Source: Thecamonas trahens ATCC 50062 (Eukaryota > Protista > Apusomonadida). Taken from it: DNA of 64,000 nucleotides. How positions within the stretch are numbered: position 1 is the first letter of the stretch; each line of letters begins with the position of its first letter. Shown in pieces: positions 20,678 through 48,913 of this stretch. The stretch covers positions 52,803 to 116,802 of the forward strand of contig NW_013657614.1 of NCBI RefSeq assembly GCF_000142905.1, read 5' to 3'. A program made the translations under genes and the position numbers. A model generated the notes under the pieces. It had not been told where the DNA came from. It saw nothing but the letters and a program-made list of their open reading frames with translations, and did not search any database.

Positions 20678-22531
20678 ATGTCGCTCCTCTCGCCGCAGTC
20701 GTCCGAGAACACTGGCGTGGTGGGCCTCCACTCCAAGCCGACGGAAGAGCTTGCGCTGGATGCGCCCTTCCGCCCTGTCCGCTTCTCCAAGGTCTACCAC
20801 TCGCTCCAGCACAAGCCCTGGGCTGACCACTATGTCCCCTACACCGACATGGTCCGCAAGCTCGCCGCCCTTGTTTCCGTCGAAGCCGCCACTCTCTCCG
20901 AAGCCGGCGCCTCCGATCCTCCGCTCCCGCTCAATCTCATCGAGCGAGTCGCTCTGCCCGATGAGCATCCGGCCGGCGCAGATCTGGAGGAGGTCATGCC
21001 CGAGCTGGACGACGTCGACATCGATCCCGAGACAAAGAGCTTCCGCAGGTGGATCGCAGATCTCGAGGCCTCGCGCAAGGCCGTGGCTAGCTTCATCGAG
21101 GGCAATCTTGATGACCTACGCGCCTTTATTGCCCGGCGCAAGCTCCTTCTCGAGCGTATCGAGGCCGGCACAGAGCCGGCCGTCGACGACGACAGCGCCC
21201 ACGACGCCCTCGTCGACGAGCTCGCCGGTGACAACACCGTCGGCGACACTGCTGCCCGCCTCCACGAGTTTATCGACCTCAATGCTGAGGCCCTCACCCG
21301 CCTCTGTCGCTCGTACGAGGCCCTTGTCGGCACCCCGCACGAGGTTGTCCACGCCATCGAGGTCATGCAGGCCGACACCAACACTGCCATCTCCGCCCTC
21401 GTCGTCACAGACCACACCATCCGCGTCAAGCTTCTCGAGGCCCTCGTCGCCGCTCCCTCGCGCCAGTCCTCGCCCGAGCCAGCCTCGACCCCTGCGTCCT
21501 CGTCGGTGCCCACCGGCCTCGCCTGGCGCGCCGTCGACGCCGTCGTCGTCGACGAGCTCGACCTCGACTCACTCGCCCTCGGCAAGACACATAAGATCTG
21601 GGTCCGCATCATCGACACCGCCGTCGGTATTCCGCTCAAGGTCCCCGTCCTCGTCGCCCGCGGCAAGCTGCCGGGCAAGATCCTTGGCCTCACCGCTGCC
21701 CTCCATGGCAACGAGGTCAACGGCATCCCGGTCATCCAGTCTGTCTTCTCGCTCCTCAACCCTGCAAAGCTTTGTGGCACCGTCGTCGGCGTCCTCGTCG
21801 CAAACGTCGTCGGCTACGAGGAGTCCACCCGCGGCATGGGCCTCCGCGGCAAGGACCTCAACCGCTGCTTCCCCGGCCGCCCTGACGGCGACTGCGAGGC
21901 GCAGTACGTCTACTGGCTCTTCCAGAAGATCATTGCAAAGTTTGAGGTCCTCATCGACCTCCACACCGCCTCACAGGGCCGCGAGAACTCGCTCTACGTC
22001 CGCGCCTCCATGAACAACGACGAGGTCGCCGCCATCGCCCAGCTCCAAAAGTCGCAGATCATCGTCCACAACACCTCGCCCGACGGCTCGCTCCGCGCAG
22101 CCGCCATGGCCGAAGGCATCCCTGCCATCACCGTCGAAATCGGCGACTGCTCCGTCCTCCAGCCGCGCTTCGTCTCACACGCCCGCCGCGGCATCTTCAA
22201 CATCCTCTCCTACTACTCTATTATCGCTGCTCCCATTGTTTCTTACGGCGACCGCGACACCGTCGTCTGCGGCAAGTCCTCCTGGATTTACACCCCAGTC
22301 GGCGGCATGCTCCGCATCTACCCACGTCTCACCCAGTGGGTCGAGGAGGGTGAGGAAATTGCTGTCATTCGCTCTGTCTTTGGCGCTATCGTCCACCGCG
22401 TCCCCGCGCCCTGCCGCGGCATCATCATCGGCCGTGCAACAAACCCGGTCGCCCGCGCCGGCGACCGTATCGTCCACATCGGAACAGTCGTGTCCTCATT
22501 CGCCGCAGAGTCGCACGACGGCCACGAGTAG
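20678..22531 (+). CDS. SPX-like domain fused to a succinylglutamate desuccinylase/aspartoacylase (M14 AstE/AspA) Zn-hydrolase, 617 aa
   Basis: VRFSKVY...KPWADHYVPYTDMVRKL and LHEFIDLNAEALTRLCRSYE resemble the SPX first and last helices. ALHGNEVNG, DLNRCFPG, IDLHTAS and ITVEIG are intact; lipoyl-like C-terminal domain. Confidence 0.9.
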   Translation: MSLLSPQSSENTGVVGLHSKPTEELALDAPFRPVRFSKVYHSLQHKPWADHYVPYTDMVRKLAALVSVEAATLSEAGASDPPLPLNLIERVALPDEHPAGADLEEVMPELDDVDIDPETKSFRRWIADLEASRKAVASFIEGNLDDLRAFIARRKLLLERIEAGTEPAVDDDSAHDALVDELAGDNTVGDTAARLHEFIDLNAEALTRLCRSYEALVGTPHEVVHAIEVMQADTNTAISALVVTDHTIRVKLLEALVAAPSRQSSPEPASTPASSSVPTGLAWRAVDAVVVDELDLDSLALGKTHKIWVRIIDTAVGIPLKVPVLVARGKLPGKILGLTAALHGNEVNGIPVIQSVFSLLNPAKLCGTVVGVLVANVVGYEESTRGMGLRGKDLNRCFPGRPDGDCEAQYVYWLFQKIIAKFEVLIDLHTASQGRENSLYVRASMNNDEVAAIAQLQKSQIIVHNTSPDGSLRAAAMAEGIPAITVEIGDCSVLQPRFVSHARRGIFNILSYYSIIAAPIVSYGDRDTVVCGKSSWIYTPVGGMLRIYPRLTQWVEEGEEIAVIRSVFGAIVHRVPAPCRGIIIGRATNPVARAGDRIVHIGTVVSSFAAESHDGHE

Positions 22532-39702: not shown

Positions 39703-41424
39703 TTACTCGGTCGCGTCTGGAGCTGTTGGCGTCGCGCTGGTCATCGGGTCGTGGTCGACGATGGTTTCGAGGTTGTAGCGGGCGCGGATGTCGGCGGCAA
39801 ACTCGGGGTCGACCCTCTCGATGCCGACGCAGATCTCCTCCAACAGCGGAGCATCGGCGCAGAGCGAGTAGAAGAGGTCGACGTCAAAGCCGCGCTCGTC
39901 GTCCGACTTGCGCAGCTCCTCAAGCTCGGCGGCAGGTGTCTCCATCGACGAGTCAGTCGACTCCTTGGCGCCGGTGACCCGGAGCGCCATGACGTCGATG
40001 GCCATGACAGCCATGACCGACTGCACGAAGCCGGCAATGAGGTCGTCAAGCCCGATGCCAAGCTGCGCAAACTGCCGCCGGTCGCAAAGGATGAGGCGCG
40101 ACGAGTCGGTCGAAGAGAGCGAGGTAGAGAGGTTCGTCCCGAGGCACGCCCAGGAGTCGAGCCCGTCGTCGATGGCACGCGGCAGCGGCTCGCGCGCACG
40201 CCGCGCGTACATGGCCAGCGGCGCAAGCCCACGGCCGGGCACGTTGCCCACCATGAACCGCAGGTCCGCCACAAACGTCTTGCCCTTCTTCGTCGGCATC
40301 ATGCCCACGTGGTACAGCCGCCCGGCGCCCGGTGTGTGCGACGACCAGTTAGCCCCGCCCACCAGGCCCTGCACAATGAACACGTCGTACGGAAGGCTCT
40401 TGGCATCCTCCATAAACTCCGCGAGCTCGCGCGGCGAAGTGATGCACCACACCCCGGCTCCGGCGTTGCCATACGGCGACTTGACCACCGCCACTCCGCC
40501 GAGCGATGCCACGTACAGCGGGACCGACGCAAGCTGCACATCGTTGACCGTGTACGGCGCCAGAATCCGGAGACCAGAGTCCGAAAGCTGCGCAGAGAGG
40601 AGCTTGTACGCCTTGGACGCCACAAGCTTGTTGCGCCCTCCTGCGAGGCACGCCGCCACAGAGTTCATGATCACCGTCTTGATCGGAGTCACCGGCAGCG
40701 CGCACCATGGCTTCTGAGTCACGTACCGCATGCACGCCCGGATTGCCACCCACTCGCCCTCGGGCGAGAGCACATACATGACCGAGTCCTCAAACTTGAC
40801 CGCGGGCTCGTCGTCGTTGTAGTGGTACTCGACAAGGAAGACCTCCTCGTCAAAGACGTCGGCCATCGTCTTGGCATAGCCCGACGCCTCCATGTAGTTC
40901 TTGTCAAACAGGACCGCCAGCCGGCCGCCGGGCACCCGCTCGGACGACCCGGCTTCGGCCGTTTTGAACGCCGTCTGCATGTGCGTCGCGTACGCCCCGT
41001 GCTCGATCGAGTCGTTGAGCGGCGGCATCGACTTTTGCCCCGACGGGCTCGAGTTGGTCTCCACCACGCACATCCGCCGAACACCCTCGGCGTTGGTCAC
41101 GTTGAACAGATCCGTCCCCGCCCACGGCAGGAGCTGCGGCTCGTAGTTGAGCACCTGCTTGAGCGCATCCTCATCAACCTCGGGATGGAGGTGCGAGTAG
41201 CGAGCAGCAATCTGCTCCTTTGTCATGTTGAAAAAGTACGAGACCAGCGGATGTGGGACGGCATTGAGCGTCCGCTCGTAGAAATGATCCGAAGGCACAA
41301 AGGTTCCAGGAGAAACAACCACCGTCGAACCCTCCACTCCCTTGAGCAGCCGCTGCCGCTTGCCGCTTGCGTCCGTGTCGGCCTTTGAAAAGTACTTGGC
41401 CTTGCCAGCTGCTTCCGCGCTCAT
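39703..41424 (-). CDS. Circularly permuted ATP-grasp amidoligase-like protein, 573 aa
   Basis: The metal-binding D...ExN motif (AGTDLF...VVETNSSPSG) lies N-terminal to RNKLVA, VVKSPYGNAGAGV, FIVQGL and DLRFMV, which is the permuted order of ATP-grasp motifs. Confidence 0.78.
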   Translation of the reverse strand: MSAEAAGKAKYFSKADTDASGKRQRLLKGVEGSTVVVSPGTFVPSDHFYERTLNAVPHPLVSYFFNMTKEQIAARYSHLHPEVDEDALKQVLNYEPQLLPWAGTDLFNVTNAEGVRRMCVVETNSSPSGQKSMPPLNDSIEHGAYATHMQTAFKTAEAGSSERVPGGRLAVLFDKNYMEASGYAKTMADVFDEEVFLVEYHYNDDEPAVKFEDSVMYVLSPEGEWVAIRACMRYVTQKPWCALPVTPIKTVIMNSVAACLAGGRNKLVASKAYKLLSAQLSDSGLRILAPYTVNDVQLASVPLYVASLGGVAVVKSPYGNAGAGVWCITSPRELAEFMEDAKSLPYDVFIVQGLVGGANWSSHTPGAGRLYHVGMMPTKKGKTFVADLRFMVGNVPGRGLAPLAMYARRAREPLPRAIDDGLDSWACLGTNLSTSLSSTDSSRLILCDRRQFAQLGIGLDDLIAGFVQSVMAVMAIDVMALRVTGAKESTDSSMETPAAELEELRKSDDERGFDVDLFYSLCADAPLLEEICVGIERVDPEFAADIRARYNLETIVDHDPMTSATPTAPDATE

Positions 41425-41917: not shown

Positions 41918-44203
41918 CTACACAACCCAGCCCTCGTGGTCCGAGACCCGCTGAACGATGTAGGTCCAGAGGGCGTGCATGCCGCGGGCGACGACCGGCT
42001 CGCCCGAGACCTCCTCCATCGGGGCGAGGCCGCCAACGTTGGACGCGTTGAGCTCCGAGAGCACTCGCTTGCCGTCGTCGCCGACGAGGGTGTCGATACC
42101 GTAAAACGTGATGTTGTGCTTGCGGAGGACCGGGTCAAGCTTGCGGATGAGCTCGACCTCGTCGTCGTCGGCGGCGGCGACATGCGATGTCCCGCCCATC
42201 GACGCGTTGCACACCCAGTTGCCCTGCTGCGGGAGGCGGATGGAGGAGGCGATGATGCGGCCGTCGATGACCACGGTCCGCTTGTCGCCCTCGCGCACGC
42301 CCTCCAGGAACTTCATGCACACCACGCCGTGAAAGAGGTCGTAGTCCGGGTCAGATCCGTCCGACCGCGGCGTCGGCATTGCGTTGTCGAGCACACCCCG
42401 CAAGTGGCTCTCGACGTACTCCTCCCACGCCACACCGACCTTGTCGTGCTCGACAAAGACCCGTCCGTCGGCCGCCACCCGGGTGATGCCCTTACCGCCG
42501 CCGTCTTGCACAGGCTTGATCACAATCGCCGGGTACTCGGCCCGGAACGCCTCGACCTCGGCCACCGTCTTGCAGTACGCCAGCGGCGCGCAGAGCTCGG
42601 CCACCTCGGGCAGCCAGCCTTTGGAGCACACCCGCAGAAAGTCGGTCGTCCCGTTGATGATCCGCCACTCGTCCACCATCCGCGCCATGCCGTCGAGGAA
42701 CGCCCGCGTCACCGGCCGCGAGAGGCGCGGAAAGACAACGTCAAAGTCTGCAAGCGACATCTGCCGCGCCGTCGCAAAGTTGACCTCGGTCAGCGGCTTC
42801 CACCCAAACTTGGGCCCGACCTTGTGGACCCACACAGACTCGGCGTCGTGCGGCGGGTAGAAGAACGATGTGTTCGCCGGGTTGAACCGCGACGCCACAA
42901 ACACGCCCTCAGCCGCAGGGTGGTCCGCCAGCGCCCGCGCCATCGACCACAGCGAGTTGGCCTTCTTCGACGTCGCGTGGTCCATCACAATGAGCATCCG
43001 CAGCTGCCGCCGTGTTGCCGCCTTTTGCCGCAGCGCATGCGCCGTCGCCGCAGACGCCTCGCGCCGCGCGAGAATCGCGTCGAGAATAAACGGCGCCGCG
43101 TTGCGCGCCGTGCCCTCGGACGGGAACGCGTGCATCCGCAAGCCCGGCGAGGTGTTCGCCTCCAGAATGCAGCACCCAGCCGACGCCAGCGGCGCCTCCA
43201 TATCCGCCACAATCACGTCGATGCCCACAAGATCCAGCATCAGCGCCTCGGCAACCTCCACGCACATCTGCTTAATCTCTGGGTGCAGCCGGTCCGTCAC
43301 GTCGACCGCGTTGCCGCCGGCGGACAGGTTGGAAATGCCCAGCAGCTGCACCTTTTCACCGGCCGCAGGCACTCGCGCCAGCGCGCCCATTCCCAGATAG
43401 GCAGACACCGCCGCTGCGTCGATGACCGACCGCGGGTGTGTGTGCCCGGGCCCGCGCGTCGGGTCCGTGTTGAGCGCGTCCACAAGGTCGGCCACGCTCG
43501 ACTCCCCGTCGCCCACAGCCACCGGCGCCGTCCGCATCGACGCCGCAAACACTCCGCCGGCAATGACCAGAATCCGCAGCTCGGTCCCGACTGCCTGCCG
43601 CTGGGCCAGAAACGGAATAGGCTTGCGCGCGTTGGTGCCGAGCATCGACATCGACGTCGCCACCCGCGCCGCCGCCGTCAGATCCGCAACCTCGGCGTCG
43701 GTCAGCCCCTCGGGCTCGTCGGCAGACCCAGCATTAGCCCGCGGAGGCGCAATGTCGAGTACCACGCCCTCGCCGTGCGCCCCGTCCGTCGGCTTGATCA
43801 CCGTCGCGCACCCGGCCTGCTGGTTCGCCCGCACAAACTGCGTCAGCCGCTCGAGATCAGACTCGGGAATGTCGCCAAACCGGAGCACGCACCGCAGCGA
43901 CTTGGCCGTAGGCAGCGAGCGCCGCTCCAGGAGCACCGCGCACGCAGCCTTGTTCTCCGCAAGCCGGTGGCCAATGGCCGACCCGAGCTCCGTCCGCGCC
44001 CGCTGGAACACAATCGGCGTCGAGTCCGGCGGCCACACCGCAGCCATGTTCGATGCTCCCTCCAGCACCTCACACTTCCACCCACGCCGATGCGCCTCGG
44101 CCAGCAGCAGCTGATTCGAAATAGAGAGCTCAGCCCACTCGCTCTCGGCAAGCTCCACCCCTGTGCTTCCTGCGCCACCCGAGGTGCCCGCGACGTTGCT
44201 CAT
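41918..44203 (-). CDS. Tandem double ATP-grasp ligase: cyanophycin-synthetase/GshF-type domain + bacterial glutathione-synthetase (GshB)-type domain, 761 aa
   Basis: Domain 1: ELSISNQLLLAEAHRRG, KPTDGAHGEGV, ELRILV, VGDGESSV..L...N.DP.RG.GH, SNLSAGG.AVDVTD..HP, GIDV, LEANTSPGLRMH.FP. Domain 2: LADFDVVFPR, KPVQDGGGKG, EGDKR, NASMGG, YGIDTL, SELNASNVGG. Likely start accATG at 44203. Confidence 0.9.
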   Translation of the reverse strand: MSNVAGTSGGAGSTGVELAESEWAELSISNQLLLAEAHRRGWKCEVLEGASNMAAVWPPDSTPIVFQRARTELGSAIGHRLAENKAACAVLLERRSLPTAKSLRCVLRFGDIPESDLERLTQFVRANQQAGCATVIKPTDGAHGEGVVLDIAPPRANAGSADEPEGLTDAEVADLTAAARVATSMSMLGTNARKPIPFLAQRQAVGTELRILVIAGGVFAASMRTAPVAVGDGESSVADLVDALNTDPTRGPGHTHPRSVIDAAAVSAYLGMGALARVPAAGEKVQLLGISNLSAGGNAVDVTDRLHPEIKQMCVEVAEALMLDLVGIDVIVADMEAPLASAGCCILEANTSPGLRMHAFPSEGTARNAAPFILDAILARREASAATAHALRQKAATRRQLRMLIVMDHATSKKANSLWSMARALADHPAAEGVFVASRFNPANTSFFYPPHDAESVWVHKVGPKFGWKPLTEVNFATARQMSLADFDVVFPRLSRPVTRAFLDGMARMVDEWRIINGTTDFLRVCSKGWLPEVAELCAPLAYCKTVAEVEAFRAEYPAIVIKPVQDGGGKGITRVAADGRVFVEHDKVGVAWEEYVESHLRGVLDNAMPTPRSDGSDPDYDLFHGVVCMKFLEGVREGDKRTVVIDGRIIASSIRLPQQGNWVCNASMGGTSHVAAADDDEVELIRKLDPVLRKHNITFYGIDTLVGDDGKRVLSELNASNVGGLAPMEEVSGEPVVARGMHALWTYIVQRVSDHEGWVV

Positions 44204-44592
44204 GGTGTCGTCAAAGTCGTTGGTCTTGGTGAGGAACGGAGGCTCCAACAAATCGCTACACCACCGTGTTGCTGACGTTGCCTGTTGCTTGCGTGACAAG
44301 CGGTTGCCTTTTGCTTGCGTGACAAGCGGAGGTTGCGTCACGCACCCGCAACTCGTCACTCTGCTTTTTAACTCGGACTTGTTCCCCGGTCAAAAATGGT
44401 CGTGGTTCGGGCACGGCCATTCCCTCCTCGACTTCGGCCCGGACACGGCACCTCTTTGACCTGCATCTGGCCACCACAAAACTCCACCACAAAGCGAGGT
44501 CAGAGACTCGGACGTTTGTTCCTCCTCTCACCCGCAACCTGCAACCGCAATCCGCATCCCGCACCCCGCAACCCCGACACACGGCATCAAGC

Positions 44593-46974
44593 ATGCTCCT
44601 GGCCACGCTCATCGTCGCGCCGTGGGTCCTTGTCGCTGGCCTCACGGCGCTGGTGGTGGTCCTCGCGGCTCGGCTCTCGCCGGCCAAATCGGCGGCCTCT
44701 GAGCTTGTGGTCGGCGCATCGGTGGATGGACCAGGCCATTGGCGGTATGCTTGTGCCGAGGGAGGGCCTGTCTTCCCCTCACCCAAGGCCTCGGCCCTCC
44801 CGCCGGGCGGGCCATCATCCAAGCGGGTCGCCCGCCTCGCCTCGCGCATCTCGCTCTACCATCGGGTCGAGCTCGGGAGCCGCAAGATCGCCCGCCTCGC
44901 GCCGACCACCGCCGCCGCCCTCCTCTCGGTCATGGACGCCATGGATGCCATCGATGAGGTCTATCTGGTCCAGGCGTGGCGGAAGAACCCAAAGCTCCGC
45001 GAGTATCTCGTCGCCCGCCTCTGGAGCTCGCCGCCGGCCTGGCGCCGGTACCTCTCAGACGAGCTCGAGTTCTTTGACTTTAACAAGGGCCCGTTTGACA
45101 AGCTCGAGGATAGGGTGTTTGTCAAGCCGCTGCGCGGCGTGGTCCTCCCGCCGTCGGCCCCGCCGGGATCCGGCCTCTACCCGCCGTTCATGATGACCCG
45201 CATGGACGTCGGCGAGTGGCTGATGGCGTGGGAGGAACATGTGGCGTCGCTGGGCGAGGACGCGAGCCCGCCCGCCGATCCGACATCGCCTGTCGTTGCC
45301 CTCGTTGCCTCGTCGGCGCCCGACGCTGTCGCCGGTGTCGCCGTCCGCCCGTACTCTCGCCTGTACGCGCGGACGCTCTCGCGCGCCGCCGCCGCCATGC
45401 GCGCCGCCGCCCGCCACGTCCGCACTCCCGAGCTCGTCACCTTTCTGCACTCGCGCGCCGCTGCGTTCATGACTAACAACTACGCCGCATCCGAGGCCGA
45501 CTGGCTCGCCGTTCCCTTTGCCAACGCCGAGTTTGTCCTTGTCATCGGCCCGTACTCCAAGTACGGCGATCAGCTGGCGTCGACTAAGCGGGCATTCAAG
45601 GCCGTCGTCGCCATTCCGCAGCGCGAGCTCTCGACGGNNNNNNNNNNNNNNNNNNNNNNNNNNNNNNNNNNNNNNNNNNNNNNNNNNNNNNNNNNNNNNN
45701 NNNNNNNNNNNNNNNNNNNNNNNNNNNNNNNNNNNNNNNNNNNNNNNNNNNNNNNNNNNNNNNNNNNNNNNNNNNNNNNNNNNNNNNNNNNNNNNNNNNN
45801 NNNNNNNNNNNNNNNNNNNNNNNNNNNNNNNNNNNNNNNNNNNNNNNNNNNNNNNNNNNNNNNNNNNNNNNNNNNNNNNNNNNNNNNNNNNNNNNNNNNN
45901 NNNNTCGCCGACGCGCTGCGGCTGGCCGGCTCGGCCGGCGCCGGCCCGCAGCCGACGGCCTCGAACCTCCCGTCGCCCGGCATCCTCAAGGGCAAGCACG
46001 GCTCGATCCGCCTCATCCTCGCCAATGTGCTCAAGGCCAAGTATGTTCACATCCTCAAGCCCGGCGCCAAGCTTGTGTACGATCGCAACGACGCGGCCAA
46101 GCTCTCGTTTGAAAGCTTTATGCTCTGCGTCGTCTACCACGAGCTCTACCACGGGCTCGGTCCCAAGCGAGTCTCGCTCGAGAGCTCGCCGCACTACGGC
46201 AAGCTCATCAACGCGGCCATGGGCCCGATCCACTCGCCGCTCGAGGAGGCCAAGGCCAACATCGGCGGCTTCTGGGGCCTGCTGCGCATGCTCCGCCGCG
46301 ATCCAGCCACCCTCCCCTTCCCCGACGGCATCGAGGACGTCCTCGCGGACGTCAGCATCGGCTCGGTCTGCCATACCTTTGTCGCCTCGCTCTTCCGCTC
46401 CATGCGCTTTGGCCTCCACGAGGCCCACGGCCGGGCCGCCATGCTCCAGTTCCACTTTCTCCTCGCCCGCGGCGCCATCACCACCGCCATCTCGCGCTCG
46501 GTCTCGCTCGACTCGATCGCTGGCGTCGCCGACGCCGAGTACGACTCGGACGACTCGGGCCTGTCCGAGGACTGGAAGCCGACCTACGCCCGCACCTCCT
46601 TCAAGGTTCATCCCGACAAGCTCTACAACTCGGCCTACGCCCTTCTCGGTGAGATCATCGCCGTCCAGGCTGCTGGCGACACCGCCGCTGGCGCCGCCCT
46701 CCTCGACGAGTACGCCTCATCAGTCGCTGTCGACGCCGCCATGGCCCTCGAGGCCATGGCCCGTATCCCCACAGACATCCGCCCAGACTACTCCAACCTC
46801 CGCTCGCTCCTCCGCAGCAACATCGCCTCGGCTGGCTTCCGCGACTCTATCCTCTCCGACGACGATTCGGACACTGACCATGACTCGGACTCGGACTCGG
46901 ACGACGGCGAGGACCACGATGAGCTCTCCGACAACTCCGGCGACGACGATGACGACGAGGCCTTTGTCAGATAG
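44593..46974 (+). CDS. Dipeptidyl peptidase III (peptidase M49, HEXXH type) with N-terminal TM anchor; contains a gap
   Basis: NKGPFDKLED..F, PPGSGLYP, NNYAASEADW, IGPY, ASNLP, NVLKAKY, HELYHGLGP, LEEAKAN, FRSMRFGLHEAHGRA, IPTDI. Confidence 0.9.
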   Translation: MLLATLIVAPWVLVAGLTALVVVLAARLSPAKSAASELVVGASVDGPGHWRYACAEGGPVFPSPKASALPPGGPSSKRVARLASRISLYHRVELGSRKIARLAPTTAAALLSVMDAMDAIDEVYLVQAWRKNPKLREYLVARLWSSPPAWRRYLSDELEFFDFNKGPFDKLEDRVFVKPLRGVVLPPSAPPGSGLYPPFMMTRMDVGEWLMAWEEHVASLGEDASPPADPTSPVVALVASSAPDAVAGVAVRPYSRLYARTLSRAAAAMRAAARHVRTPELVTFLHSRAAAFMTNNYAASEADWLAVPFANAEFVLVIGPYSKYGDQLASTKRAFKAVVAIPQRELSTXXXXXXXXXXXXXXXXXXXXXXXXXXXXXXXXXXXXXXXXXXXXXXXXXXXXXXXXXXXXXXXXXXXXXXXXXXXXXXXXXXXXXXXXXXADALRLAGSAGAGPQPTASNLPSPGILKGKHGSIRLILANVLKAKYVHILKPGAKLVYDRNDAAKLSFESFMLCVVYHELYHGLGPKRVSLESSPHYGKLINAAMGPIHSPLEEAKANIGGFWGLLRMLRRDPATLPFPDGIEDVLADVSIGSVCHTFVASLFRSMRFGLHEAHGRAAMLQFHFLLARGAITTAISRSVSLDSIAGVADAEYDSDDSGLSEDWKPTYARTSFKVHPDKLYNSAYALLGEIIAVQAAGDTAAGAALLDEYASSVAVDAAMALEAMARIPTDIRPDYSNLRSLLRSNIASAGFRDSILSDDDSDTDHDSDSDSDDGEDHDELSDNSGDDDDDEAFVR

Positions 46975-47834: not shown

Positions 47835-48629
47835 TCAGTCGACGATGGCAATCGAGAGCAGGCCTTGCGGCTTGTAAGGGTACGGAAGCTTGCCAAAGGT
47901 GTTGTTGTGGACGACGACGCCGAGGTCGTTGACCAGAATCTGCCACACCTGCTTGATGTCTGCCGGCCACGAGTGGACACAGCCGTGCGAGTTGGGCAGC
48001 GGGAGCGAGGGGTCAAAGTCACCAGTATGCATAAGGATGCCGTCGCGGATGTCCGAAATGAGGAAGGCGGCGTTGCCGGCGAGACCCTGGACCGCCCGGT
48101 TGACCGGGTACGGTCCAAAGTCCTTGACGTCCTCCTCGGGCGTGTTGAGATCAAAGGTCATGAGCCCAGTCGGCGTCGAGCCGTCCCCAGCAAGCATGTT
48201 GAGCGCCGTGCCGTCCGCCGCATTCTGCCCGTGAGTCTTGACCGGAAACGAGAACCGCAGGTTGTTGTCGGCATCGTACAGCGAGGCCGAGACCTCGACC
48301 GACCGGTTCTTGAACACCGGGATGTACACCTTGTACTTGAAGCCAGGAAGGACCGTGCCCGAGTCCTTGTATCCGTCGTACATGTGGAGGTCGAGCAAGA
48401 GGTTGGTCGTCTCGGCGCCAGCGATCCCGTCGTCGCTCAGCTTGTTGCCACTCTGGAACGCCTCCACCGCGTTCTTGGTCGCCTCGCCGTACTCGCCCGA
48501 CGCCACAAGGCCTGACACGTGCGGCGACCGTAGCAGCAGCGACTGGAGAATCGTCACATCCGAGCCCTTCATCAGCTGCGGCGGCGTGTACGACAGATCG
48601 CGCGAGAACGGCGCCGTAAACTGGGCGCC
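47835..48629 (-). CDS. Peptidoglycan-binding domain + YkuD/L,D-transpeptidase-family catalytic domain (3' exon; 5' exon probably in the gap)
   Basis: PGBD: MKGSDVTILQSLL...GEYGEATKNAVEAFQSGNKLSDDGIAGAET. YkuD: TPTG...GILMHTG...NSHGCVH. Acceptor GCGACAG| at 48630. Confidence 0.85.
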   Translation of the reverse strand, partial: GAQFTAPFSRDLSYTPPQLMKGSDVTILQSLLLRSPHVSGLVASGEYGEATKNAVEAFQSGNKLSDDGIAGAETTNLLLDLHMYDGYKDSGTVLPGFKYKVYIPVFKNRSVEVSASLYDADNNLRFSFPVKTHGQNAADGTALNMLAGDGSTPTGLMTFDLNTPEEDVKDFGPYPVNRAVQGLAGNAAFLISDIRDGILMHTGDFDPSLPLPNSHGCVHSWPADIKQVWQILVNDLGVVVHNNTFGKLPYPYKPQGLLSIAIVD

Positions 48630-48913
48630 CTGTCGCCCTCCACAACCGACAACACGCATGCAAGCACGCACACAAGCACACCAANNNNNNNNNNNNNNNN
48701 NNNNNNNNNNNNNNNNNNNNNNNNNNNNNNNNNNNNNNNNNNNNNNNNNNNNNNNNNNNNNNNNNNNNNNNNNNNNNNNNNNNNTCCCCACTCCCCAATC
48801 CCCTCCGCCTAAGCCCAAGCACCCCCCCCCTTCCCTCCAAACTGATCGGACGAGAACAAGTCACGCGCTGCGAGCTCACCACAACCCACCACCTCACCAC
48901 TACACCTCCAACA

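What the first reader, a model, noticed from the sequence alone, without database searches (positions are those of the whole stretch)
41918..44203. Unusual double ATP-grasp fusion: CphA/GshF-type domain joined to a bacterial GshB-type domain
Seen: one uninterrupted frame with domain 1 (about 43070-44130), an Ala/Arg linker and domain 2 (about 41940-42997). Known: GshF is GshA + CphA-like ATP-grasp; CphA1 is ATP-grasp + Mur ligase; eukaryotic glutathione synthetase is a separate permuted family. This protein has neither a GshA nor a Mur ligase domain. I do not recognise the architecture. Inference: a two-step peptide synthetase assembled from two bacterial genes.
Basis: partly seen in the sequence, partly recalled or inferred. 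Interest (0 to 1): 0.8.

Follow-up and report, generated by a model that had tools for sequence, protein, structure and literature searches.

The report
Rare double ATP-grasp ligase, apusomonad cluster
A single gene of the protist Thecamonas trahens joins two complete bacterial-type peptide-bond-forming enzymes, a combination seen in only one other sequence, and it sits in a small conserved cluster with a third ligase and two peptide-cutting enzymes, which points to an undescribed small peptide rather than glutathione.

Summary
Window 41918-44203 (-) is one uninterrupted 761-codon frame in Thecamonas trahens. NCBI names the protein "glutathione synthetase".

- **Two modules.** The N-half is a cyanophycin-synthetase G-domain-type ATP-grasp. 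The C-half is a GshB-like ATP-grasp. Both keep all catalytic residues.
- **Rarity.** An exhaustive HMMER search found the fusion only here and in one marine-metagenome relative (62% identity). Every other hit matches only one half of D.
- **C-half origin.** It is not a canonical GshB. It belongs to a large uncharacterised bacterial family (GshB'). That family is encoded in an operon X, GshB', AstE/AspA-like hydrolase, mostly in Saprospiraceae.
- **N-half origin.** It comes from a separate family of stand-alone CphA-G-like ligases.
- **Cluster.** X (a circularly permuted ATP-grasp ligase), D, a divergent DPP III-like peptidase (P) and the AstE-like hydrolase are contiguous in the relative. In Thecamonas they lie within 26 kb.
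- **Housekeeping genes.** Canonical GSS, GCL and DPP III are encoded elsewhere in the genome.

Most likely D is a two-site ligase that extends a small peptide started by X, and the two hydrolases turn the product over. The product is unknown.

I class it as a new variant of a known kind, with moderately high interest.

The parts
41918..44203 (-). Gene D: the 761-aa double ATP-grasp ligase. The stop codon is at 41918-41920. The NCBI model adds a small 5' exon upstream.
   Evidence: ORF and translation; 100% identical to P0001; single copy in the genome.
43049..44146 (-). Dn, residues ~20-385: a CphA G-domain-type ATP-grasp module, including the G-omega insertion. Key residues are K85, K137, H143, R210, R224, N292, S294, D329, E348, N350, G354 and R356.
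   Evidence: TIGR02068 192 bits; aligned to TeCphA1 7wac; residue roles taken from PMC9427784; conservation in the family.
43001..43048 (-). Ala/Arg-rich linker, residues 386-401. It joins the C-terminus of the Dn-type protein to the start of the GshB'-type protein, and M403 lies about where the bacterial proteins begin.
   Evidence: Conserved in P0002. Stand-alone homologues end at about residue 382-390 and begin at about residue 399-403 of D.
41921..43000 (-). Dc, residues 402-761: the GshB-prime module (GshB N-domain plus ATP-grasp). Key residues are R493, K528, K563, R642, R656, N666, D704, E717 and N719. The loop signature GNWVCN replaces the Arg233 loop of GshB.
   Evidence: PF02955, NF003573 and 1gsa matches; invariant columns; nested in the bacterial GshB' radiation.
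39703..41424 (-). Gene X, 573 aa: a circularly permuted ATP-grasp ligase of an unnamed family, immediately downstream of D.
   Evidence: 56% identity to L001:346-2379 and 46% to the bacterial operon gene. No Pfam, NCBIfam or PDB sequence hit. AF2 model pLDDT 84; Foldseek best matches are 3n6x, 3k1t, eukaryotic GSS and GspS; Atlas.
44593..46974 (+). Gene P: a divergent M49 (DPP III-like) metallopeptidase with HELYH at 46138-46152, head-to-head with D. An assembly gap of N lies at 45638-45904.
   Evidence: 56-60% identity to L001:5595-7373. That orthologue matches Caldithrix DPP III 6eom and 5zum at E 4e-48 and 7e-47. Sequence and gap read. The canonical DPP III lies elsewhere.
20678..22531 (+). 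AstE-prime, 617 aa: a succinylglutamate desuccinylase/aspartoacylase-family hydrolase, 17 kb from X. Its orthologue is contiguous with X-D-P in the relative.
   Evidence: PF24827 4.5e-32; 58% identity to L001:7540-9345; 45% to the bacterial operon gene.
44277..44328 (.). Tandem 26-nt direct repeat (2 copies) in the D/P divergent intergenic region, followed at 44332-44344 by the sequence GTTGCGTCACGCA, which holds the reverse complement (GTCACGC) of the repeat's GCGTGAC core. It is a possible shared regulatory site.
   Evidence: the repeat finder; sequence. The function is untested.

Best explanation
D is a genuine fused enzyme with two independent, active ATP-grasp (acyl-phosphate-forming) ligase sites. 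It works in one pathway with the adjacent permuted ATP-grasp ligase X.

X makes a first amide bond. The GshB-prime half of D adds an amino acid to the free C-terminal carboxylate of that product, as GshB does with gamma-Glu-Cys. The CphA-G-type half adds a further amino acid to a peptide C-terminus. That amino acid is held by its alpha-carboxylate at R356 and is probably acidic, as CphA does with Asp.

The output would be a non-ribosomal tri- or tetrapeptide, or a short oligomer, that is not glutathione. The DPP III-like peptidase P and the AstE/AspA-like amidohydrolase break it down or recycle it.

Shown here: the architecture, the intact catalytic residues, the family assignments and the gene linkage. 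Inferred: the order of the steps, the substrates and the product.
For: Both sites are intact.
- Dn keeps the counterparts of TeCphA1 K261, H267, R309, R323, N394, S396, D431, E450, N452, G456 and R458.
- Dc keeps the counterparts of E. coli GshB R86, K125, K160, R210 and R225 by direct count on the alignment, and the Mg triad as D704, E717 and N719. These columns are invariant in 37 sequences.

The fusion is conserved end to end, at about 66% identity in each half, with a conserved linker, in a diverged relative.

Linkage.
- In bacteria X, GshB' and AstE' form an operon in 51 of 81 loci, and X with AstE' is seen in 64 of 81.
- In the marine relative X(-), D(+), P(+) and AstE'(+) are contiguous within 9 kb.
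- In Thecamonas X, D and P are adjacent and AstE' is 17 kb away.
- The flanking genes differ between the two species and D is inverted, so only these genes stay together.

X has the fold of glutathione-type permuted ATP-grasp ligases.

Canonical GSS, GCL and DPP III exist elsewhere in the genome, so the cluster genes are extras.

Stand-alone Dn-type ligases in prokaryotes sit in operons with further ATP-grasp ligases and with RimB-like or FGase-type hydrolases. That is the same pairing of ligases with hydrolases.
Against: - No substrate or product is known for X, GshB', AstE' or the stand-alone Dn-type family, and I found no paper on them.
- Synteny between two related eukaryotes could be inherited rather than functional.
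- In fungi X occurs alone, without linked partners.
- No Dn or P homologue accompanies the bacterial operon, so their involvement rests on the two apusomonad loci only.
- The order of reactions and the 'acidic amino acid' guess come from residues that are conserved across much of the CphA-like clade.
- Expression as a single polypeptide is not shown. M403 could act as an internal start.
Confidence: 0.55

Rival explanations
1. D, alone or with X, builds a polymer. It would be a cyanophycin-like or poly-acidic poly-amino acid. The CphA-type site extends the backbone repeatedly and the GshB' site adds a branch or prepares the unit. P and AstE' act as depolymerases.
For: Dn carries the residues that distinguish CphA1 from GshF: His in the P-loop and the Arg458 equivalent. 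CphA2 shows that a G domain alone can polymerise dipeptides (abstract listed). A dedicated peptidase pair lies next to D.
Against: The CphA N domain that holds the growing polymer is absent, as is the M domain. The position of primer-binding Glu215 appears to be Arg80, although that alignment is weak. Stand-alone Dn-type proteins are common in RimK-type contexts, not cyanophycin contexts.
Confidence: 0.15
2. The ligases modify the C-terminal tail of a protein, as RimK does on S6, TTL/TTLL on tubulin and LysX on LysW. AstE', whose Zn-hydrolase family I recall as related to M14 carboxypeptidases (untested here), would trim the added residues.
For: GshB' and Dn are both RimK relatives. Dn-type genes sit beside RimK and RimB-like genes. 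A 96-aa protein with a strongly acidic C-terminal tail is encoded inside the bacterial operon in 8 of 81 loci.
Against: That small protein is absent from most operons, from the window, from L001-L003 and, with this query, from the Thecamonas genome. Its C-terminus is not conserved. Known AstE/AspA enzymes and DPP III act on small molecules and short peptides. X resembles small-molecule ligases (GSS, GspS).
Confidence: 0.15
3. The database name is right: D is a glutathione or homoglutathione synthetase paralogue. In bacteria X and GshB' would be an alternative GshA/GshB pair.
For: GshB is the best named match of Dc. X's model is closest to PF08886 'GshA' and to glutathione synthetases. Five Bacteroidota genomes with X have no E. 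coli-type GshA and no GshB above the cut-off.
Against: Dc scores 89-103 bits against cut-offs of 272-299. The flexible-loop Arg233 position is Leu, Ile or Val in 31 of 34 bacterial members and Val in both apusomonads, within a family signature W-[LIV]-C-N. Thecamonas has canonical GCL and GSS. X occurs without GshB' in Tenacibaculum, in Bacteriovoracaceae and in fungi that make glutathione the usual way. This reading gives no role to the second, CphA-type site.
Confidence: 0.1
4. Artefact: bacterial contamination, a chimeric assembly, or two genes wrongly read as one.
For: Both halves have bacterial nearest relatives. There is an assembly gap in the neighbouring gene P.
Against: The frame is continuous. 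G+C is 62-70% across D and 58-71% in the rest of 36-50 kb apart from the windows holding the N gap. The contig carries BRO1, dynactin p62 and FG-GAP genes. The same fusion with the same linker occurs on independent marine metagenome contigs from four ENA assemblies and one Logan run.
Confidence: 0.03

Closest known systems
GshF (bifunctional GshA / ATP-grasp glutathione synthetase; PDB 3ln6, 3ln7)
   Same: One polypeptide carries two sequential peptide-ligation sites. Its C-terminal ATP-grasp is the same subfamily as Dn (NF002688 142 bits, PDB E 5e-23).
   Different: The first module of GshF is a GshA (PF04262) fold, not an ATP-grasp. Dn has the CphA-type His143 and Arg356 where GshF has Tyr/Phe and Met/Tyr. 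D has no GshA domain.
Cyanophycin synthetase CphA1 / CphA2 (PDB 7wac, 7lg5, 7ta5, 8fxh)
   Same: This is the best-scoring relative of Dn. All catalytic and Asp-binding G-domain residues are conserved, and the G-omega insertion is present.
   Different: D has no N domain and no Mur-ligase M domain. Its second site is a GshB-type ATP-grasp. D scores 190-192 bits against a cut-off of 850. The Glu215 equivalent is probably not conserved.
Bacterial glutathione synthetase GshB (PDB 1gsa)
   Same: Dc has the GshB N-domain plus ATP-grasp layout and keeps R86, K125, K160, R210, R225 and the Mg-binding triad (D704, E717, N719 in D).
   Different: Dc is far below the equivalog cut-offs. It has the loop signature G[SN]W[LIV]CN instead of the Arg233 loop. 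Its genomic partners are X and an AstE-like hydrolase.
GshB-prime / X / AstE-prime operon of Bacteroidota (uncharacterised; auto-annotated 'glutathione synthetase')
   Same: Dc is 30-40% identical over its full length and nested in this family. X and AstE' orthologues accompany D in apusomonads.
   Different: In bacteria the three are separate genes, and no CphA-type ligase or DPP III-like gene is nearby.
Stand-alone CphA-G-like ATP-grasp ligases in RimK/RimB-type multi-ligase operons, and multi-ATP-grasp plus acylphosphatase fusions (all uncharacterised)
   Same: Dn aligns end to end with these 320-aa proteins at 30-41% identity and shares Q201, H143 and R356. They also work beside other ATP-grasp ligases and hydrolases. 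Tandem CphA-like ATP-grasp fusions exist.
   Different: None of them is fused to a GshB-prime module. Their partners are RimK, other CphA-like copies or acylphosphatase.
Carbamoyl-phosphate synthetase large chain CarB
   Same: It is the textbook protein with two ATP-grasp modules in one chain (mentioned in PMC11915815).
   Different: In CarB the two modules arose by internal duplication and carry out phosphorylations, not peptide ligation. D joins two different subfamilies.

Membership tests
ATP-grasp superfamily (both halves) | ATP-phosphate lysines, the catalytic arginine and the Asp/Glu/Asn Mg-binding triad. | tested here: met
   Dn has K85, K137, R210, D329, E348 and N350. Dc has K528, K563, R642, R656, D704, E717 and N719. 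All are invariant or nearly so in the family alignments.
Canonical bacterial GshB (TIGR01380 / NF003573) | Whole-protein score above the curated equivalog cut-off. | tested here: not met
   89-103 bits against cut-offs of 299 and 272.
Canonical bacterial GshB (TIGR01380 / NF003573) | A flexible-loop arginine, Arg233 in E. coli. I recall its role from Tanaka et al. 1992, which I did not re-read here. | tested here: not met
   The position is Val664 in D and Leu, Ile or Val in 31 of 34 family members. A near-canonical Tenacibaculum GshB has Arg there.
Canonical bacterial GshB (TIGR01380 / NF003573) | It is the organism's route to glutathione. | tested here: not met
   Eukaryotic GSS (PF03917, 1e-89) and GCL (PF03074, 3e-95) are encoded elsewhere in the genome.
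Cyanophycin synthetase CphA1 (TIGR02068) | N domain (PF18921) plus G domain plus Mur-ligase M domain (PF08245, PF02875), with a score above 850 bits. | tested here: not met
   Only the G-domain part of the profile (positions 288-475, best stretch) is matched, at 190-192 bits. There is no PF18921, PF08245 or PF02875 hit.
Cyanophycin synthetase CphA1 (TIGR02068) | G-domain catalytic and aspartate-binding residues: K261, H267, R309, R323, N394, S396, G456 and R458. | tested here: met
   All are conserved in D, as K137, H143, R210, R224, N292, S294, G354 and R356.
GshF (NF002688) | An N-terminal GshA domain, and an ATP-grasp with Tyr/Phe in the P-loop and Met/Tyr at the CphA Arg458 position. | tested here: not met
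   There is no PF04262 hit. D has His143 and Arg356 at those positions.
GshB-prime family (operon partner of X; unnamed) | Full-length similarity, the loop signature G[SN]W[LIV]CN, and linkage to X and an AstE-like gene. | tested here: met
   30-40% identity over residues 400-750. D reads GNWVCN. X is adjacent and AstE' is 17 kb away, and all are contiguous in L001. Dc is nested in the family tree with SH-aLRT 86-93.
Stand-alone CphA-G-like ligase family (unnamed) | End-to-end alignment of about 320 aa, with Q201, H143, S294 and R356. | tested here: met
   P0017 residues 3-319 align to D residues 26-382 at 40% identity. The tree places D on its own long branch among these proteins, and its position is unresolved.
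Enzymatic function of either half | Substrates and product. | not testable with these tools
   This needs enzyme assays or metabolomics.

The most novel reading that the evidence does not exclude
Apusomonads carry a compact eukaryotic gene cluster (X, D, P, AstE') with three acyl-phosphate ligase sites and two Zn hydrolases. It makes and recycles a still-unknown non-ribosomal peptide or short polymer. The fusion acts as a Rosetta stone that functionally links two large uncharacterised prokaryotic ligase families. It also links them to the X family, which is conserved at 45-54% identity from Bacteroidota to early fungi and Pneumocystis.
Probability: 0.35. Interest if true: 0.8.

Novelty: new variant of a known kind. 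Interest (0 to 1): 0.6.

Why it matters
The database name 'glutathione synthetase' is probably wrong for this protein, and likewise for more than a thousand bacterial relatives of its C-half.

The fusion and its conserved neighbours give a concrete, testable handle on several families with no known function:
- the X ligase, with more than 1,600 clusters, including fungi such as Pneumocystis;
- the GshB-prime family, with about 1,200 members in one Atlas cluster;
- the AstE-like partner;
- the stand-alone CphA-G-like ligases.

If the product is identified it would be a new small peptide metabolite, possibly a thiol, an osmolyte or a storage compound. It would also be a rare case of a functional metabolic gene cluster of bacterial-type enzymes in a free-living protist close to the root of animals and fungi.

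Tried and rejected
1. **Full-length model of D.** MAFFT stacked the GshB'-type homologues onto the N-half, because the two halves are distant homologues of each other. The alignment was unusable, so I did not run the job. I relied on the Atlas model statistics instead: pLDDT 0.79 and pTM 0.51, which fit two well-folded domains with uncertain relative orientation.
2. **Pairing of neighbours.** My first guess at which neighbour matches which was wrong. Searches corrected it and showed that D is inverted.
3. **Rosetta-stone adjacency in bacteria.**
   - The gene after P0017 is an FGase amidohydrolase, not a GshB'.
   - The ATP-grasp after P0072 is not GshB'-like.
   - The N-half of P0024 is unrelated to Dn.
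   - Five Bacteroidota genomes with X have no Dn-type gene detectable with this query.
4. **Polyamine genes** (Orn/Arg decarboxylase, agmatinase, deoxyhypusine-synthase-like) lie near the operon in only 9-15 of 81 loci. This is a lead, not a rule.
5. **The 96-aa acidic-tail protein** occurs in 8 of 81 loci. With this query I found none in the window, in L001-L003 or in the Thecamonas genome.
6. **Literature searches** for the fusion, the operon or X found nothing relevant. The role of GshB Arg233 is therefore cited from memory.
7. **Third word search.** I ran no further search on the separate domains, because the HMMER search has no length window and already scored both halves locally.
Full report
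**What is there.** The minus strand of the window carries an open frame from 44359 to 41918. From the first Met (44203) it encodes 761 residues. These are identical to residues 19-779 of a database protein from Thecamonas trahens ATCC 50062, an apusomonad protist. NCBI names that protein "glutathione synthetase". The NCBI model only adds a short 5' exon. G+C is 62-70% across the gene and 58-71% in the rest of 36-50 kb apart from the windows that hold the N gap. The contig carries ordinary eukaryotic genes: BRO1, dynactin p62 and an FG-GAP giant protein. The gene is single-copy.

**Two modules, both intact.** Residues ~20-385 (Dn) match the ATP-grasp G domain of cyanophycin synthetase (TIGR02068, 192 bits). 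They match the ATP-grasp of GshF (142 bits) and Ngg (93 bits) less well. The PDB matches are CphA1 7wac and 7lg5 (E 1e-35 to 1e-32) and GshF 3ln6 (5e-23).

I counted along the HMMER alignment to TeCphA1 (7wac) and used the residue roles established by Miyakawa et al. (PMC9427784). D keeps every one of these residues:

| TeCphA1 | D |
|---|---|
| K261 | K137 |
| H267 | H143 |
| R309 | R210 |
| R323 | R224 |
| N394 | N292 |
| S396 | S294 |
| D431 | D329 |
| E450 | E348 |
| N452 | N350 |
| G456 | G354 |
| R458 | R356 |

That paper states that H267 and R458 distinguish CphA1 from GshF, which has Tyr/Phe and Met/Tyr at these positions. So the N-half is CphA-type, not GshF-type. The same residues are typical of its stand-alone relatives. 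The primer-binding Glu215 probably corresponds to Arg80, but that alignment is weak.

Residues 402-761 (Dc) match bacterial GshB: PF02955 3.5e-20, NF003573 1.3e-25, 1gsa 1e-12. Counting along the 1gsa alignment gives E. coli R86, K125, K160, R210 and R225 as D R493, K528, K563, R642 and R656. D704, E717 and N719 form the Mg-binding triad, which I assign from memory to GshB D273, E281 and N283. All of these columns are invariant in a 37-sequence alignment.

A 16-residue Ala/Arg-rich linker joins the two halves. It is conserved in the one other full-length homologue.

**How rare the fusion is.** The word-index search found one other full-length relative, P0002: 816 aa, 62% identity, on marine metagenome contigs from four ENA assemblies and one Logan run (Tara Oceans among them). 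The exhaustive HMMER search of 1.84 billion cluster representatives has no length window. It returned only D's own cluster as a full-length match. Every other one of the 150 best hits matches only one half of D:
- proteins of about 330 aa covering residues 400-750, at 30-40% identity;
- proteins of about 320 aa covering residues 25-382, at up to 40-44% identity;
- CphA1s;
- multi-domain proteins with two or three CphA-like ATP-grasps plus an acylphosphatase.

In the ESM Atlas no cluster of 50 or more members matches more than half of the model (TM by query at most 0.41). So tandem ATP-grasp proteins exist, but this combination is known only from these two organisms.

**Where the halves come from.** The nearest relatives of Dc are auto-annotated "glutathione synthetase" of Saprospiraceae and other Bacteroidia. 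They are not canonical GshB:
- They and Dc score 89-130 bits against cut-offs of 272-299.
- The flexible loop reads G[SN]W[LIV]CN. E. coli GshB and a near-canonical Tenacibaculum GshB carry an arginine there (Arg233 in E. coli). I recall the importance of that arginine from Tanaka et al. 1992 and did not re-check it.

I call this family GshB'. Its genes lie in a conserved operon, X then GshB' then an AstE/AspA-family hydrolase (AstE'). I first saw it in L006. It then appeared in 51 of 81 genome loci recovered with X, and X with AstE' alone in further loci such as Tenacibaculum and Bacteriovoracaceae. With a near-canonical GshB as a distant outgroup, the apusomonad Dc pair nests inside the bacterial GshB' radiation (SH-aLRT 86-93, a quick tree).

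Dn has a different origin. None of the 81 loci has a Dn or P homologue, and five Bacteroidota genomes with X gave no Dn match with this query. Its stand-alone relatives occur in prokaryotic operons next to RimB-like plus RimK genes, next to three further ATP-grasp genes, or next to an FGase amidohydrolase. In a tree Dn sits on its own long branch among them, unresolved.

However, they come from two different systems.

**The neighbourhood.** Immediately downstream of D is X (39703-41424, 573 aa). Head-to-head upstream is P (44593-46974, with an assembly gap at 45638-45904).
- X is 56% identical to L001:346-2379.
- P is 56-60% identical to L001:5595-7373.
- AstE' of L001 (7540-9345) is 58% identical to window 20678-22531.

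In the relative the four genes are contiguous: X(-), D(+), P(+), AstE'(+). In Thecamonas the order X, D, P is kept with D inverted, and AstE' lies 17 kb away. The genes outside this set differ: BRO1 and a YkuD-type gene here, aminopeptidase P there. In a 28.7-Mb genome a chance distance of at most 19 kb has a probability of about 0.001 (my arithmetic). In each genome D shares a divergent intergenic region with a partner gene: P here (390 bp, holding a tandem 26-nt repeat) and X in the relative (100 bp).

P belongs to the HExxH-type branch of the M49 DPP III family (6eom and 5zum, E 4e-48 and 7e-47), although it misses the Pfam model. Thecamonas also has a canonical DPP III (703 bits), a canonical GSS and a canonical GCL. 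All the cluster genes are therefore additions to the housekeeping set.

**What X is.** X has no Pfam, NCBIfam or PDB sequence match. An AlphaFold2 model (pLDDT 84, pTM 0.88) is closest to these structures (Atlas agrees):
- 3n6x, a putative glutathionylspermidine synthase of the circularly permuted ATP-grasp class;
- 3k1t, a putative gamma-glutamylcysteine synthetase of family PF08886;
- yeast, human and plant glutathione synthetases;
- E. coli GspS and YgiC/YjfC.

TM-scores of 0.3-0.5 mark it as a family of its own. The family is large (1,643 word-search hits) and unusually conserved, at 45-54% identity between Thecamonas, Bacteroidota and early-diverging fungi: Mortierellaceae, chytrids, Basidiobolus, Umbelopsis and Pneumocystis murina. 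All members are named "hypothetical". In the two fungi checked X stands alone. In a quick tree the fungi form one clade (99), the apusomonads another (100), and the two join only weakly (25).

**How it most likely works.** Shown:
- three intact acyl-phosphate-type ligase sites (X, Dc, Dn) and two Zn hydrolases that stay together in two diverged genomes;
- X, GshB' and AstE' forming an operon in hundreds of bacteria.

Inferred, by analogy with GshA/GshB, GshF and CphA1:
- X forms a first amide.
- Dc adds an amino acid to the resulting C-terminal carboxylate.
- Dn adds one more residue, held through its alpha-carboxylate by R356 and possibly acidic.
- The product is a tri- or tetrapeptide or a short oligomer.
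- AstE', whose family hydrolyses N-acyl amino acids such as N-succinyl-Glu, N-acetyl-Asp and N-acetyl-DABA, and the DPP III-like P degrade it.

DPP III enzymes prefer peptides of four or more residues (my own knowledge). That would fit P and the extra ligase module appearing together in apusomonads, but this is speculation.

I put 0.55 on this family of explanations. The rivals are a polymer synthetase (0.15), a protein-tail ligase (0.15), true glutathione synthesis (0.10) and an artefact (0.03).

**Verdict.**
- The protein works like GshF or CphA1, with multi-site, ATP-grasp-based non-ribosomal peptide ligation, but it is a member of neither family. It also fails the tests for canonical GshB.
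- It is a new variant of a known kind.
- Its main value is as a link between several large, unstudied enzyme families, and as a flag on a probable mis-annotation.
- Earlier notes of this scan exist only for this same window. They proposed the three-ligase "make-and-break" cluster, the permuted ATP-grasp and the DPP III. I tested these here and they hold.

Noticed in passing
window 39703-41424 (-): Gene X belongs to an unnamed, very conserved family of circularly permuted ATP-grasp ligases. Members are 45-54% identical between Bacteroidota, apusomonads and early fungi including Pneumocystis murina (PNEG_00967), and all are annotated as hypothetical. It deserves its own study.
   Followed up: partly
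window 45638-45904: A run of 267 N (an assembly gap) lies inside the DPP III-like gene P. It keeps the frame artificially, and the low G+C in the composition profile at 45-46.5 kb is due to it.
   Followed up: yes
window 44277-44344: A tandem 26-nt direct repeat lies in the D/P divergent intergenic region. It is followed by an inverted copy of its GCGTGAC core, which may be a shared regulatory site.
   Followed up: partly
window 20678-21670 (+): The N-terminal ~330 residues of the AstE-like protein have no family match. The extension is shared with the marine relative and is absent from the ~320-aa bacterial proteins.
   Followed up: partly
L006:6256-6546 and 7 other loci (L017, L041, L045, L070, L074, L079, L094): A ~96-aa protein with a strongly acidic C-terminal tail is encoded inside or beside the bacterial X/GshB'/AstE' operon in 8 of 81 loci. 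It could be a substrate or carrier protein. With this query I found none in Thecamonas.
   Followed up: partly
L006:2973-6254 and 8-14 other loci: Polyamine genes (Orn/Arg decarboxylase, agmatinase, deoxyhypusine-synthase-like) lie just upstream of the bacterial operon in 9-15 of 81 loci.
   Followed up: partly
L107:405-5830: A metagenomic operon carries four different ATP-grasp genes, one of them CphA-G-like, followed by RimB-like and RimK genes. It looks like a multi-ligase system of unknown product.
   Followed up: no
P0043, P0059, P0075, P0122, P0139, P0152: These are large uncharacterised proteins with two or three CphA-like ATP-grasp modules plus a C-terminal acylphosphatase domain, and in one case TPR repeats.
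   Followed up: no
window 47835-48818 (-): A gene for a peptidoglycan-binding domain plus YkuD L,D-transpeptidase domain lies in this eukaryote, next to the cluster (Pfam 1.8e-10 and 1.7e-5).
   Followed up: no
G005 (Tenacibaculum sp. A30) C1:655776-656741: This genome has a near-canonical GshB (246 bits, just under the cut-off) about 50 kb from its X/AstE' pair. The other four Bacteroidota genomes checked have only GshB'-level matches and no E. coli-type GshA.
   Followed up: partly
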